Source: Selaginella moellendorffii (Eukaryota > Plantae > Lycopodiophyta). From it: 64,000 nt of DNA. The notes under the pieces were generated by a model that was not told the DNA's origin, did no database searches, and worked only from the letters and a program-made list of their open reading frames with translations. Positions 24,949-34,721 of this stretch are shown piece after piece. The stretch spans positions 80,065-144,064 of the forward strand of contig NW_003314302.1 in the NCBI RefSeq assembly GCF_000143415.4, given 5' to 3'. How positions within the stretch are numbered: the stretch's first letter is position 1; each line of letters opens with the position of its first letter. Made by a program: the position numbers and the translations under genes.

Positions 24949-25380
24949 ATGAATACAGCTTTGAAATTATTTTTAGGATTCATGCTTTTCACCTCTTATG
25001 CTATTGTAAGTGTAAAATTTATTCTGTTTAATGAGTAACATTTACTTTTGTAGGGTGATGTGTGTCGAAATTTTAAATTCTATTGCATAGAAATTAGTTT
25101 TATTAGGCAATGGATCCATGTTAGGTGCAGGGGAGATAATGAAAAAGAGTATTCAGATGATCAGTATTATGATCTCGACAAAGTGCTTGGGAATAATGAT
25201 GGAGGTTTAGTGAAAGGAAGTGGCTTTATAGATTCTTGTACTGCTGAAATGTATGATACTTTATTAGTTCTAATATGTGCAACTAGAGAAAAGGGGAAAT
25301 TTATGGAATCACATATAGAAATGAATAATTTCCTAAAATATGAAAATGGTGAACTTAAATTTTGTATTCCACCTTTATAA
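24949..25380 (+). CDS. Secreted cyanovirin-N homolog (CVNH) lectin, copy 1 (exons 24949-25005, 25054-25380)
   Basis: Signal peptide MNTALKLFLGFMLFTSYAI; GT-AG intron; two CVNH half-repeats F..C...C...DLDKVLGNNDGGL and FIDSC...C...EMNNFLKYENGEL. Confidence 0.82.
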
Positions 25381-25449
25381 TCTAGCAAGATTAATAATAG
25401 ATTCATCTGATTTAGAATGAACTTTGATTTTTTGAATGGTATAGAGGCA

Positions 25450-26020
25450 CTAGAATGGCCAACTCCTAGAGACTAAGTTGAAAAAGGATCTATTTAAAAT
25501 CTTGAAGGGTATCTTAATGAAAAGGCATGCTCTTGGTATATCTTGGGGATGTATTTTTGAATCAATTAGATTGTTTTTGGGGAAAGAGAGAGATCCTTGA
25601 ATAGAAAGTGAGGTAGTGGATGAGCCTCCTGACATAAAAGAGCACACTCAGACTAATAGTAATGTCTAGATAGTAGTGACTTGCTATGCTCACATGCTTG
25701 TGTGATATATTGGTGTATTGTCTAGAAACAATGAGTGAGCATGGAGTATGTGGGGGAAGAGGTAAGTGCTGGATTGATGGCTAGGATGGCCAACTCCTCA
25801 AAATCTTCTTAGAATCTTGAAGGGTAAGGTGTATCTCTTGGGATATATCATTATAAAAGAAGGGTGTATTTAAATCAATCCATCAATCAAATTGCTTTTG
25901 GGGAAAGAGAAAGAAAAATCATTGCATGTAGAGTGAGGTAAAAAGGAGGATGAGCTTCTTGACAAACAAGAGCACACTTACACTAAATATAGCTCTTAGA
26001 TAGCACTGATTGCCATGTTT
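25450..26020. repeat. Diverged direct duplication of ~240 bp (~25452-25690 and ~25783-26020)
   Basis: Shared blocks ATGGCCAACTCCT, AATCTTGAAGGGTA, TTTTGGGGAAAGAGA, AGTGAGGTA, AAGAGCACACT. Confidence 0.65.
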
Positions 26021-26029
26021 ACTAGTATA

Positions 26030-26400
26030 TGTTAAGATAAGTTGTGTTCTTGGACCTAAACACACATTTTGATTACTTCACTTTAAACTAACTTTTTGCA
26101 ACTAATTTAACACCTTATGAACATTATAAATGTGCTCCTTCTACATGCCTTCTAAGTGAATCAAAACATTATTGATGAAGTAAGTAATCACTTTTAACAT
26201 TTCACAAAGAACCTCATTTATCATCCATCAAAAAGTCATCAAAATATTATCTAAACTGAACAACATTATCAAAAACTTATACAAACTAAATAGTGTACCA
26301 AAAACAATTTTGGGAACATCTTTATTGGCACTATATCAGTATTTAGAAACAAAATCTAACTTGGTGAATTGGGTGTGTGAATCTTATTTTGTGACAAAGT
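26030..26400 (-). mobile_element. Heavily decayed Ty3/gypsy reverse transcriptase fragment
   Basis: FTKLDFVSKY, DVPKIVFGTLFSLYKFLIMLFSL, FKVK*SKCVF...TYL resemble gypsy RT motifs. Confidence 0.6.
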
Positions 26401-27419
26401 CTAAAAGGAGTATTCAATTTTACATCAATTATTATTAAAATGACTATCTCGGATATGTACTTTCTAATCTTGAGACTTTCAAATGACACTTTTTTCCAAT
26501 ATCTCTTTGACATTAGTGTATAAAATTCTAATCTCCTTCTGTGACTAATGTTGAATATGAACCTTGATTGGACGAGTATCCTTAGTTATAAAGGATGATG
26601 TGTTGCAATCTTGACCCTAAATAATATGTCAAAATTACTGCTACAACACAAAAACTATTAGGGGGATATAAAAATAGAATAAAGAAGTAAAACAAAGCAA
26701 ATAGGAAGTAATAGGGAAACAAAAGTGGTGGAAGAAAATGTAAAAACAAAGGAATGAAATGGAACTAAAATAAGAGGAATAGAAGAAAAATAAAAAAGTA
26801 TAAAACAAAAAGGAGATCAAATTTATACTTAGCATTATTATGCTACAACCAATCTATATCAAGGATGAGGTCAAAAGCTTGACCCCAATGATTGAAGCTC
26901 CAAGCTTGAGATAATTTACACATATAATTATGTTTACCTCATCCCGTGCATATGTATATATACATCTATTGCCATAAAGAATAAAAATTAGTTATACCAT
27001 ATAACACAATTATAAATGGCAACATAGGAAAGTAAATACTAGATGAATTAGTGCTGACTTGATAGTGCTCTTGAAAAAAAAATGAAGGGGTCATATAAAC
27101 CATAAAATTTTCCTTTCTAATTTGCCATATTATTTATTTGACCACCACTACCCTGGCCTTAATTAAATTCTATTGCCAAGGTTCTTACCTATTGTTTTAG
27201 CTTTTACTTGATCCTACTTAGTTTTAGCTACTCACTGCACAAGCAATAGAGTGTCAGCCATCTATCTACAAATTCTCAAATTCTCTCCCAATCCCCCTCC
27301 TTGAGTTACATTAGACTTAAAATTCAACTACACTCTCCATATGCATAAGCAGTCAAGCACACCAAGCCTCCAAGTTCCTAACATCCCTTAATACACCAAA
27401 ATTTTATCATGGGACCCTC

Positions 27420-27613
27420 TGTAAGCAATTAAAAAGAACAACTTGAAAGACGATCCATGGGGTTCAAATATAGAGGGAAATGGCCTATCAACAAAAGTGC
27501 ACCCCCTTTTCTAATCGGTTAAGGGTCTTGGGATATTTGGGGTTAAGCGTCCTTAGGTTTAAATAGTACTGGGCTGGGTGACTTCTTAGAAAGTCCAAAT
27601 TCAAAAGTTTACA
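27420..27613 (+). mobile_element. Solo LTR (194 bp) of a 5S-rRNA-bearing TRIM (Cassandra-like)
   Basis: TGTAA...TTACA termini; flanks CCCTC/CCCTT (5-bp TSD, one mismatch); 5S-like block 27541-27596; homologous to LTRs at 32649 and 33025. Confidence 0.8.
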
Positions 27614-27899
27614 CCCTTTAAATCCCAAATCTTAGATGCATCTCTTACTTCGACTAGGAAGAAATACTATGGCATAATAGCTTGGTATAGATACCTGTAC
27701 TCCCCCACTTCCATCCCGAAAGGAAAGCCCAAACCTCTGGGAAGGAGCAAGGACCAATGAGTCACATAGTACTCAAGTGAGGCATCATTGCACTTGAGCC
27801 AAGAGCACCACAATTGGTTTGTTTTCTAGGAGTGGGAGCTATTTTTAAGCATTTCCTTGGATGGCCTCTATGGCACCATTTGAGTCCATGCTCACTTTC

Positions 27900-32574: not shown

Positions 32575-32648
32575 TGTATGGGGCCAAATTATTATTAAAA
32601 AACTTGCAATCAATAGTGAAATAATTACTAGTCAATATAAAAAGATAT

Positions 32649-33218
32649 TATAAAAAAATAAAGGGAAAAACTTAATAAACAATCCATAAAAGTTTATATA
32701 TAAAAGAAAAGGCCTATAAATAAGAGTGCATTTCTTTTTTTCAATTGGTTAAAGGTTTTAGAATATTTGAGGTTAAACATTGAATCGTACTAGGCTGAGT
32801 GACATTTTAGAAAGTCCAAATTTAGGGGTTTACATTTGGTATGAAAAAAGTTTCGAATCTGACTCTATTAATTAGCTAAGGGAATCACACCATTTGCTAA
32901 GATTAATATTTGCCTTCAATTGAGATTGATATAAGCGATAGGGTATCAAGAGAGTGGGGCTCTCAAATTATAACTTTCAACTTTTGTTTATGAGAGTGTG
33001 AATTTATAAGAAAGTATAGTGGATTGTAAAAAACTAAAAGGAATAATTCAAAAGACGATTTATAAGGGTTTAACTATAGAGAGAAAGGGCCATAAATAAA
33101 AGTACACCCCCTTTTCCAAATGGTTAAGAATTTTTAGATACTTGTGGTTAAGTGTTTTTTTATTTGAATAATACTAAGTTGAATGACCTCCCAAGAAGTC
33201 CAAATTTAAGAGTTTACA
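32649..33218 (+). mobile_element. Full-length non-autonomous TRIM (~570 bp) with 5S-derived LTRs (Cassandra-like)
   Basis: LTR1 32649-32834 (TATAAA...TTACA), PBS-like TGGTATGAAA, ~190-bp non-coding interior, purine-rich AAGAAAGTATAGTGGAT, LTR2 33025-33218 (TGTAA...TTACA); flanks GATAT/AATAC. Confidence 0.78.
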
Positions 33219-33569
33219 AATACAAGCATTTATTTCTTGAAATACATTAATACCTTTTAACAATGAAACTCCATTCAAAAAGTCAAGAATACAATTTCTT
33301 ATATGTTTGGGTTATTGTCTAACTATTTTAAAATGTAAAGGGCAAACATTTAAATAAGTTTAATGACTATTTATATTACTTTGTTGTCACTCCTAGCCAA
33401 TTATATGTTGCTTTTTCTAGATACACATTACCAAATAATCTACCTATTAAAATACAAAACTCTCCTTGACAAGGACCACAAATTTAATCTAACCCTCAAG
33501 TCTCAACAATTAACACTATATTAAAGAAGTATTATACTAATCATATATAATATTATCACACTATTTTTA

Positions 33570-33785
33570 TATAAATATATATGTGTGTGTGATATTACAT
33601 TTTTTGAAATATATATATATGTGTGTGTGTATATATATATATATATATATATATATATATATATATATATATATATATATATATATATATATATATATAT
33701 ATATATATATATATATATATATATATATACATACATACATACATACATACATATAAATATACATAATATATACACATAGACATAT
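33570..33785. repeat. (TA)n microsatellite with (TG)n and (TACA)n flanks
   Basis: Directly visible. Confidence 0.97.
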
Positions 33786-33821
33786 AAAATGCTGAAATTT
33801 ATGCTTTGGAATCTGCTTGTG

Positions 33822-34131
33822 CGATTTTCATTCTTTGTTTTAAGAAGTTTCTTTTATTTTCAGGATAAACATCCCTGGCTGCTGCCCACATTCTCTAGCA
33901 AATATCATGCCAAAGTGTTGAGACGCGAATCTCAATAGAAGACCAACATGAGGAGCTCCTGATGGGCATGACCTCACGGTCTGCTTTTGCTTCTGCTGAG
34001 CAAAAGCCAGGGGAAAAAAGAGGGGTGGGAACAAGGAACATAGAGAAGAGGACAAAGAACAAAGAACAAAGAACAAATGAGTGGCCATGGAAGCAAACAA
34101 ACATCAATTCTTATGTTCCATTTTGGTGGTT
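33822..34131 (+). pseudogene. Decayed copy of the last intron, last exon and 3' UTR of the kinase gene (~19410-19800)
   Basis: AAACATCCCTGGCTGCTGCCC...AATATCATGC..AAGTGTTG..ACGCGAATC...TAGAAGACC shared with source; TGG->TGA stop and deletions. Confidence 0.85.
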
Positions 34132-34291
34132 TCTTTCTTTATTTTTTATTTTTAAAAACGAAGCATAGTTAAAGGCCACTTTGCTTGTTTTAAAACAGAA
34201 GCATAGTTCAAGCCCACTTTCTTTGTTCTTACTGAGTTGTGATAGATAATATTGGTTATGTTGCCATTAGCATAATAGCATAATAACAAGT

Positions 34292-34721
34292 ATGAATGCT
34301 GCTTTGAAATTAGTTTTTGCATTGACGCTTTTCACCTCTTATAATTATGTTGCTGTAAGTGTTATTATTTTTCTGTTTTAGAATTTTTTTTATTTTATTA
34401 TTTTGGCAGGGAGAGGTGTGTCGAGATTTTAAATTCACCTGCAAAGAAATTGCTTTCTTTAGGCAATGGATCCATGTTAGGTGTCCTCCAGATTTTGAAG
34501 ACGAGTATTTAGATCTCAACAGACTTTATGGAAATAATGGTGGGGATTTAGTGCTTGGCGGTGGTTTTCTAAGTTCTTGTAGTGCTGAAATGTATGATAC
34601 TGTATTAGTTACAACATGTAATACTGGAGTAAAGGATGAAGTAAGGACATCGCAAAGAGAAATGAATAATTTCATAAAAAATGAAAATGGTGCTCCTGTA
34701 TTTTGTGTTCCACCTTTGTGA
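34292..34721 (+). CDS. Secreted CVNH lectin, copy 2 (exons 34292-34354, 34410-34721)
   Basis: Signal peptide MNAALKLVFALTLFTSYNYVA; same intron position as copy 1; LDLNRLYGNNGGDL, GFLSSC, EMNNFIKNENG, FCVPPL*. Confidence 0.85.

What the first reader, a model, noticed from the sequence alone, without database searches (positions are those of the whole stretch)
24949..34721. Two secreted cyanovirin-N-homolog genes bracketing a TE-filled AT-rich island
Seen: two intact paralogues with signal peptides (missed by the ORF track), the same intron position, six conserved Cys and shared upstream sequence (TTACTGAGTTGTGATA). They are far more AT-rich than neighbouring genes yet have no stops, while the surrounding TEs are ruined. 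Loop regions differ strongly (RGDNEKEYSDDQ vs PPDFEDE). Known: CVNH lectins occur in cyanobacteria, ascomycetes and seedless plants such as Ceratopteris, and are not known from seed plants. Inference: a possibly horizontally acquired, fast-evolving defence lectin family kept in a repeat-rich compartment; candidate new glycan-binding or antiviral proteins.
Basis: partly seen in the sequence, partly recalled or inferred. Interest (0 to 1): 0.8.

Follow-up and report, generated by a model that had tools for sequence, protein, structure and literature searches.

The report
Two hidden, silent CVNH lectin genes
A spikemoss (Selaginella moellendorffii) genome region holds two intact but unannotated genes for small secreted cyanovirin-type lectins; they are new members of a lectin family already known in this plant, and one showed no transcripts in the RNA data I could test.

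Summary
Confirmed. The window is from Selaginella moellendorffii, a lycophyte. It holds two intact two-exon genes, A (24949-25380) and B (34292-34721). Each encodes a signal peptide plus one CVNH domain (Pfam 37.6 and 33.1 bits; the AlphaFold model matches only CVNH structures, TM 0.70-0.76).

They are 57% identical local duplicates. Between them lie a degraded gypsy element, TRIM-like LTRs, a microsatellite and the N gap. The gap touches neither gene, and the other haplotype is continuous across it.

Neither gene is in any protein collection searched; the nearest relatives are at most 33% identical. However, 27 cyanovirin genes are already published for this species (PMC6362431). No donor or other sign of recent transfer was found.

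The AT-richness (GC3 0.22 against 0.72-0.80 in neighbours) comes with CpG depletion like the TE island's. That points to local decay, not foreign origin.

Function is open:
- Against: gene A has zero reads in three RNA-seq runs where the neighbour 300 nt away has depth 30-90. A/B dN/dS is 0.88. B's two alleles differ by 7 replacements and 1 silent change.
- For: ORFs, cysteines and splice sites are intact in all three copies (neutral P about 0.02).

First-stage notes report similar hidden AT-rich CVNH genes on other pieces of this genome. New members of a known family; modest interest.

The parts
24892..24907 (+). 16-nt element TTACTGAGTTGTGATA, 57 nt upstream of the gene A ATG; the best-conserved part of the duplicated 5' stretch
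   Evidence: Two exact matches in the window, 0.01 expected. Also kept in the hap-2 allele of B.
24949..25005 (+). Gene A exon 1: 19-aa signal-peptide-like N-terminus
   Evidence: Translation. Hydrophobic core LFLGFMLFT, mean KD 2.29.
25006..25053 (+). Gene A intron, 48 nt, GTAAGT..TAG, phase 0
   Evidence: Sequence. 70% identical to the B intron. Same size class as the RNA-verified introns of the neighbouring gene, 49-59 nt.
25054..25380 (+). Gene A exon 2: 108-aa CVNH domain with six Cys, plus stop
   Evidence: Pfam CVNH 37.6 bits. AF2 pLDDT 79. The top 25 Foldseek PDB hits are all CVNH. Zero RNA reads in X1-X3.
27479..27613 (.). LTR-like fragment related to the TRIM-like element at 32780-33218
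   Evidence: Direct-repeat families D3 and D7.
29172..30640 (-). Degraded Ty3/gypsy-type pol fragments (RT, RNase H) split by stops
   Evidence: ORF fragments. RVT_1 at E 1.6e-6 and RT_RNaseH_2 at E 2.9e-13. This stretch has no counterpart in the other haplotype.
32475..32574 (.). Assembly gap (100 N) in non-coding island DNA; not part of either gene
   Evidence: The hap-2 locus L005 is continuous across the equivalent place.
32649..33218 (.). TRIM-like element with two LTR-like direct repeats
   Evidence: D3/D7 copies at 32780-32834 and 33084-33218. No Rfam family reaches the gathering score in 24000-36000.
33609..33772 (.). (AT)n microsatellite, about 82 units
   Evidence: TRF.
34229..34244 (+). 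Second copy of the 16-nt element, 63 nt upstream of the gene B ATG
34292..34354 (+). Gene B exon 1: 21-aa signal-peptide-like N-terminus
   Evidence: Translation. Hydrophobic core mean KD 2.40.
34355..34409 (+). Gene B intron, 55 nt, GTAAGT..CAG, phase 0
34410..34721 (+). Gene B exon 2: 103-aa CVNH domain with six Cys, plus stop
   Evidence: Pfam CVNH 33.1 bits. An intact allele lies on the other haplotype at L005 5706-6140.

Best explanation
A and B are two real, intact but unannotated members of the cyanovirin-N-homolog (CVNH) lectin family of Selaginella moellendorffii. That family is already known in this species.

Origin (inferred): a local duplication of a roughly 490-nt gene unit, after which retroelements and simple repeats accumulated between the copies.

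Product (inferred from sequence and fold): each gene encodes a cleavable signal peptide on exon 1 and one CVNH domain of about 105 residues on exon 2. The domain has the two canonical CVNH disulfide positions and a third Cys pair near the two termini. If made, the product would be a small secreted lectin of about 12 kDa. It would most likely bind mannose-type glycans through the two pseudo-symmetric CVNH sites. The loop that differs most between A and B sits where cyanovirin-N has its domain-A sugar site.

Composition: the extreme AT-richness is best explained by long residence in a cytosine-methylated, CpG-decaying TE island, not by foreign origin.

Current state (my reading): the genes are kept open by selection but are silent in ordinary tissue. 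That would make them conditionally or very narrowly expressed, fast-changing secreted cysteine-rich proteins within a birth-and-death family.
For: Shown:
- Organism.
- Pfam CVNH above cutoff for both genes. Full-length profile match to cyanovirin-N, residues 7-100.
- AF2 model pLDDT 79. The top 25 PDB matches are all CVNH, TM 0.70-0.76, followed by a sharp drop to E 0.29.
- Cys at the positions of CV-N C8/C22 and C58/C73, plus an extra pair.
- Homology is confined to the gene and 60 nt upstream. TE fragments lie between the copies.
- 27 cyanovirin genes are published for this species.
- CpG o/e is 0.31-0.41 in the genes, 0.24 in the island and 0.84-1.0 in the flanks.

Signs of constraint:
- Both ORFs are open although neutral simulation gives P(no stop) of 0.11 and 0.17, about 0.02 jointly.
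- A/B identity is enriched at family-conserved columns (44% against 66-69%, p 0.016).
- The hap-2 allele of B is intact, with start, splice sites, six Cys and stop.
- That allele pair has no indels in 375 coding nt, against 9 events in 780 flanking nt (P 0.013), and fewer substitutions (11/375 against 53/752, p 0.004).
Against: - Gene A has zero reads over 24818-26000 in three stranded RNA-seq runs, while the divergent neighbour has depth 30-90. Nineteen small older runs hold none of its words.
- Pairwise dN/dS is 0.88, with a bootstrap interval that includes 1.
- B and its allele differ by 7 replacements and 1 silent change.
- The exons are hardly more conserved between A and B (77%) than the intron and the 5' stretch (70-72%).
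- CpG depletion implies long-term methylation, which usually means silencing.
- Glycan binding, secretion and disulfide pattern are inferred, not tested.
- The constraint tests are modest (p 0.004-0.02) and partly depend on which flanks are chosen.
Confidence: 0.6

Rival explanations
1. Young relics. A and B are silenced copies of a birth-and-death lectin family that have already lost function. They drift neutrally in methylated TE DNA and are open only by luck.
For: - dN/dS 0.88.
- Replacement to silent ratio of 7:1 between the alleles of B.
- No RNA for gene A.
- CpG depletion like that of the TEs.
- Exon identity close to intron identity.
- No annotation pipeline called them.
- Unchecked first-stage notes describe decayed CVNH copies in other AT-rich islands of this genome.
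Against: - Joint probability of two open frames under neutrality is about 0.02 before counting indels.
- The only coding indel between A and B is in frame.
- Conserved-column enrichment, p 0.016.
- Indel-free coding sequence between haplotypes, P 0.013.
- All Cys, start codons and splice sites are kept in three copies.
Confidence: 0.33
2. Recent horizontal acquisition. The AT-rich genes came from an AT-rich donor (fungus, protist, virus or bacterium) and have not yet taken on the host's composition.
For: - GC3 0.21-0.23 against 0.72-0.80 in neighbours.
- The nearest detectable relatives are AT-rich transcripts of unknown organisms (GC3 0.30-0.33).
Against: - No relative above about 33% identity among 1.84 billion representatives or the 5.8-billion-cluster word search, so there is no donor candidate.
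- Shared host-size spliceosomal intron.
- Both haplotypes carry gene B between the same host genes.
- The family is broadly present in seedless plants, with 27 copies in this species.
- CpG depletion matches the local TE background.
Confidence: 0.04
3. Artefact: a chance ORF, contamination or misassembly around the gap.
For: An N gap lies between the genes, and the island differs structurally between the haplotypes.
Against: - Two independent family tests passed.
- The B locus is present at the same place on the second haplotype scaffold.
- Host genes adjoin both copies within 210-310 nt.
- The gap is 1.7 kb or more from either gene.
Confidence: 0.01

Closest known systems
Cyanovirin-family genes already catalogued in Selaginella moellendorffii (27 models; Van Holle and Van Damme 2019, PMC6362431)
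   Same: Same species, same Pfam/InterPro family (PF08881, IPR011058), mostly single-domain architecture.
   Different: A and B match no protein in the collections searched, so they are not among the annotated models. They are AT-rich (GC3 0.22) and sit in a TE island. I could not retrieve the annotated Selaginella sequences, so the distance to them was not measured.
CrCVNH, the single-domain CVNH of the fern Ceratopteris richardii (PDB 2JZJ)
   Same: Seedless-plant CVNH with the same fold: TM 0.76, rmsd 2.5 A over 103 columns.
   Different: Only 19% identical, and barely detectable by sequence (E 0.09). A and B have a third Cys pair. CrCVNH came from expressed sequences (my own knowledge), whereas A showed no RNA here.
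Cyanovirin-N of Nostoc ellipsosporum (for example PDB 2EZM, 3EZM)
   Same: Two-repeat lectin domain of about 100 residues. Cys at positions equivalent to C8-C22 and C58-C73. The motif L-x-L-N-x-x-I-x-N-x-x-G-x-L occurs twice.
   Different: 21-28% identity. A and B are eukaryotic two-exon genes with a signal peptide. The sugar-site residues are only partly kept (for example T75/R76 kept in A but not in B, read from the alignment).
Under-predicted small secreted cysteine-rich peptide genes of plants, such as defensin-like genes (my own knowledge, not tested here)
   Same: Short two-exon genes (signal peptide, then Cys-rich domain) that are missed by annotation, clustered by local duplication, fast-evolving and often expressed only in narrow contexts.
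   Different: Unrelated fold. This is an analogy of genomic behaviour only.

Membership tests
CVNH (cyanovirin-N homology) domain, Pfam PF08881 | Sequence match to the family profile above the curated threshold | tested here: met
   37.6 bits (A) and 33.1 bits (B) against a cutoff of 24.5, covering profile positions 1-102.
CVNH (cyanovirin-N homology) domain, Pfam PF08881 | CVNH fold: two pseudo-symmetric halves of a three-stranded sheet plus a hairpin | tested here: met
   AF2 model of A has pLDDT 79 and ten strands. The 25 best PDB matches are all CVNH, TM 0.70-0.76. This is a predicted structure, not a solved one, and the input alignment was made of CVNH homologues.
CVNH (cyanovirin-N homology) domain, Pfam PF08881 | Internal tandem repeat carrying the motif (L/I)-x-L-N-x-x-(I/L)-x-N-x-x-G-x-L twice | tested here: met
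   A: residues 39-52 and 88-101 of the exon-2 product. B has both repeats, the second one degenerate (G-A-P instead of G-x-L).
CVNH (cyanovirin-N homology) domain, Pfam PF08881 | Cys pairs equivalent to cyanovirin-N C8-C22 and C58-C73 | tested here: met
   C11/C25 and C62/C75 align to them. Bond formation, and the proposed third bond C4-C104, are not testable here.
CVNH (cyanovirin-N homology) domain, Pfam PF08881 | Binding of mannose-type oligosaccharides | not testable with these tools
   Needs recombinant protein and a glycan array or NMR titration.
Expressed, functional gene | Spliced transcripts | tested here: not met
   Gene A: depth 0 over 24818-26000 in runs X1-X3, with the neighbouring gene at 30-90, and a word share of 0.00 in 19 small runs. 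This covers one study and unknown tissues.
Expressed, functional gene | Purifying selection on the coding sequence | tested here: inconclusive
   dN/dS 0.88, interval 0.48-1.70, and alleles of B with 7 replacements to 1 silent change. Against that: open frames with neutral P about 0.02, conserved-column enrichment p 0.016, and no coding indels, P 0.013.
Recently horizontally transferred gene | Nearest relatives lie in a donor lineage rather than in the host lineage | tested here: not met
   No relative closer than about 33% identity anywhere. The best hits are unnamed metagenome or transcript contigs.
Recently horizontally transferred gene | Composition foreign to the host and not explained locally | tested here: not met
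   Composition is anomalous for a host gene (GC3 0.22) but equals that of the surrounding TE island, including its CpG depletion.

The most novel reading that the evidence does not exclude
Selaginella keeps a large, almost entirely unannotated subfamily of secreted CVNH lectins inside methylated, AT-rich TE islands. This would be a plant counterpart of the 'two-speed genome' compartments of filamentous pathogens. Copies would duplicate, diversify at their glycan-binding loops and die quickly, and would be de-repressed only in narrow contexts such as infection or reproduction. A, B and the other hidden AT-rich CVNH genes noted by the scan would all belong to it.
Probability: 0.2. Interest if true: 0.55.

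Novelty: new member of a known kind. Interest (0 to 1): 0.3.

Why it matters
CVNH lectins attract interest as antiviral and antifungal glycan binders, and plant members are few and little studied.

This locus shows that the S. moellendorffii annotation misses divergent CVNH genes. No protein among 15 billion resembles them closely. If the scan's other, unchecked notes hold, the published count of 27 genes understates the family.

The pairing of intact secreted-lectin genes with TE-like composition and silence is a concrete case for asking two questions: whether plants keep defence genes in heterochromatic compartments, and how such genes escape decay.

It does not change what is known about the taxonomic range of the family.

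Tried and rejected
- Word-index protein search with A exon 2 found nothing. With a 19-sequence CVNH profile it found only two unnamed hits. I therefore could not fetch the annotated Selaginella, fern or cyanobacterial CVNHs and built no phylogeny.
- The exhaustive profile search gave 11 weak hits. Three of them (P0014, P0020, P0023) look like repeat-driven false positives and were left out of the alignments.
- The first AF2 run, on a two-sequence alignment, was useless (pLDDT 42).
- The ESM Atlas feature search was only weakly suggestive.
- The source of the nearest relatives could not be named; they are short transcript-like contigs.
- No terminal inverted or direct repeats flank either gene copy, so capture or carriage by a transposon is not supported.
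- The bacterial promoter/terminator scan is irrelevant for a plant and was at shuffle level.
- Clustering of the allelic replacements in B residues 39-49 is not significant (p 0.067).
- The hap-2 allele of gene A lies about 1 kb beyond the retrievable locus and was not reached.

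
Full report
**Organism and setting.** Exact look-ups of intronless window ORFs (a PPR protein, a BBE-type oxidase, an OVATE protein) identify the window as Selaginella moellendorffii. The proteins lie on a 1,675,513-nt scaffold. Near-identical copies lie on a 1,770,965-nt scaffold, GL377600.1 of GCA_000143415.2, which is the second haplotype of that assembly. The finding therefore sits in a lycophyte, a seedless plant.

- Gene A is 24949-25005 / 25054-25380. Gene B is 34292-34354 / 34410-34721. 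Both are on the + strand. Their phase-0 GT..AG introns (48 and 55 nt) sit at the same place, between a signal-peptide-like exon and the domain exon.
- Both exon-2 products pass the Pfam CVNH model (37.6 and 33.1 bits, cutoff 24.5). A profile of the pair aligns end to end with cyanovirin-N (residues 7-100).
- With a 23-sequence alignment of CVNH segments, AlphaFold2 gives pLDDT 79 and pTM 0.63. Foldseek's 25 best PDB matches are all CVNH structures (TM 0.70-0.76, rmsd 2.5-2.8 A), after which E jumps to 0.29.
- The two proteins are 57% identical. Six Cys are invariant. C11/C25 and C62/C75 align with the two cyanovirin-N disulfides. C4 and C104 are an extra pair near the termini, and their bonding is inferred.
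- The upstream 16-mer occurs exactly twice in the window. It is part of the duplicated segment, which spans only 24889-25376 and 34226-34717 at 71.6% identity.

**The gap.** The 100-N gap at 32475-32574 lies in non-coding AT-rich DNA far from both genes. The second haplotype is continuous across the equivalent place, with about 70 nt between the matched flanks. The gene models do not depend on the gap; only the spacing between A and B is approximate.

**The island.** Between the genes lie:
- gypsy-type RT and RNase H fragments broken by stops, on the minus strand at 29.2-30.6 kb;
- LTR-like repeats of a TRIM-like element;
- an (AT)82 microsatellite.

The 27.1-31.5 kb stretch has no counterpart in the other haplotype, so the island is structurally polymorphic. 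No terminal repeats flank the gene copies. The simplest history is a local duplication followed by TE insertions between the copies.

**Is it new?**
- Neither gene, nor anything above about 33% identity, is present among the collections searched. The word search with A found nothing; it would have caught B, which shares many 5-mers with A. The exhaustive profile search of 1.84 billion representatives gave 11 weak hits, the best at E 1e-10, all unnamed metagenome or transcript contigs or odd eukaryotic repeat proteins. No gene is called at the B allele on the second haplotype.
- The family itself is well known here. Van Holle and Van Damme (2019, PMC6362431) list 27 cyanovirin-family genes in S. 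moellendorffii (25 single-domain, 2 double-domain; 11.8% of its lectin genes). [quoted passage not shown]
- First-stage notes of this scan also report many hidden, AT-rich CVNH genes, some described as decayed, on other pieces of this genome. These notes are unchecked leads.

**Composition and the transfer idea.** GC3 is 0.21 and 0.23 in A and B, against 0.72-0.80 in seven neighbouring genes. CpG observed/expected is 0.31 and 0.41 in the two loci and 0.24 in the island, against 0.84-1.0 in the flanks, and TpG+CpA is in excess. This is the signature expected of methylated DNA decaying by deamination; that TEs, but not genes, are methylated in this species is my own knowledge and was not tested. 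Together with host-size introns (the neighbour's RNA-verified introns are 49-59 nt), the presence of B at the same place in both haplotypes and the lack of any donor candidate, recent horizontal acquisition is unsupported.

**Expression.** No indexed RNA run holds gene A's words. I laid three raw stranded RNA-seq runs of the species (one study, about 9.2 million reads read from each) on 23000-26000.
- The divergently transcribed AAA-ATPase gene has its 5' end only about 150-200 nt from A's ATG. It shows depth 30-90, ten spliced junctions, and both haplotypes at roughly equal share.
- Depth is exactly 0 from 24818 to 26000, on both strands.

Gene A is therefore silent in those samples.

**Selection.**

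| Test | Result |
|---|---|
| A vs B, Nei-Gojobori dN/dS | dN 0.27, dS 0.31, ratio 0.88 (bootstrap 0.48-1.70) |
| A vs B identity, exon / intron / 5' stretch | 77% / 70% / 72% |
| Neutral simulation, P(no stop) at this divergence | 0.11 (A), 0.17 (B), about 0.02 jointly |
| Coding indels between A and B | one, in frame |
| A/B identity by family conservation of the column | 44% in the least conserved third, 66-69% in the rest (p 0.016) |
| B vs its hap-2 allele, exon 2 | 7 replacements, 1 silent change |
| B vs its hap-2 allele, exon 1 | 1 replacement |
| B vs its hap-2 allele, indels | 0 in 375 coding nt vs 9 events in 780 flanking nt (P 0.013) |
| B vs its hap-2 allele, substitutions | 11/375 coding vs 53/752 flanking (p 0.004) |

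The hap-2 allele of B (L005 5706-6140) is intact, with start codon, splice sites, six Cys and stop in place. The signals are mixed. Frames and fold-determining residues are maintained, but amino-acid change is nearly unconstrained.

**Reading.** I judge it most likely (about 0.6) that these are still-functional, narrowly or conditionally expressed secreted CVNH lectins of a birth-and-death family. The main rival (about 0.33) is that they are recently dead, silenced copies.

The mechanism is inferred, not shown: signal-peptide-directed secretion, a three-disulfide CVNH domain, and binding of mannose-type glycans at the two pseudo-symmetric sites. The hypervariable loop after C25 lies at the position of cyanovirin-N's domain-A site.

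**Verdict.** These are new, unannotated members of a known family in a lineage where that family is known. Interest is modest. It would rise if the hidden AT-rich CVNH genes across the genome prove to form an expressed, diversifying compartment.

**Limits.**
- The joined spliced proteins were not searched.
- The A allele of the second haplotype was not reached.
- No phylogeny with named plant, fungal or cyanobacterial CVNHs could be built.

Noticed in passing
window 24136-24150 (minus-strand AAA-ATPase gene, 20.1-24.64 kb): RNA reads that join 24078 to 24208/24209 carry 14-15 extra letters in two versions, presumably allelic. The 15-letter version matches 24136-24149, which points to a 14/15-nt micro-exon inside that 130-nt 'intron'.
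   Followed up: partly
window 32649-33218: An earlier first-stage note calls this a 5S-rRNA-carrying Cassandra-like TRIM. An Rfam search of 24000-36000 at gathering thresholds found no family at all, including 5S. The LTR-like direct repeats are real.
   Followed up: partly
window 27100-31460 vs L005 760-2673: The degraded gypsy stretch of this haplotype has no counterpart in the other haplotype. Island DNA that does align is only 68-89% identical, against about 95% in the genic flanks. The island is therefore structurally polymorphic.
   Followed up: partly
window 34931-35866 (+), three exons: A GC-rich gene for a 248-aa protein with a signal-peptide-like start lies 210 nt after gene B. It is annotated on the other haplotype with Pfam PF28132 (DDB_G0273449 family). 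Its function is unknown.
   Followed up: no
L005 5829-6140 vs window 34410-34721: Four of the seven amino-acid differences between the two alleles of gene B fall in residues 39-49, the stretch around the first N-x-x-G-x-L motif. They include two adjacent double-nucleotide changes. The clustering is not significant (p 0.067).
   Followed up: yes
window 34150-34227: A 38-nt unit is tandemly duplicated (85% match) directly upstream of the point where homology between the A and B loci begins.
   Followed up: no
window 25441-25990: A degenerate two-copy direct repeat lies just 3' of gene A (76% identity over 105 nt). It is probably a TE remnant.
   Followed up: no
window 38457-40115 (+): A two-exon heat-shock transcription factor gene (HSF30-like, 458 aa on the other haplotype, 99% identical). 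I used it as an anchor to fetch the second haplotype.
   Followed up: yes
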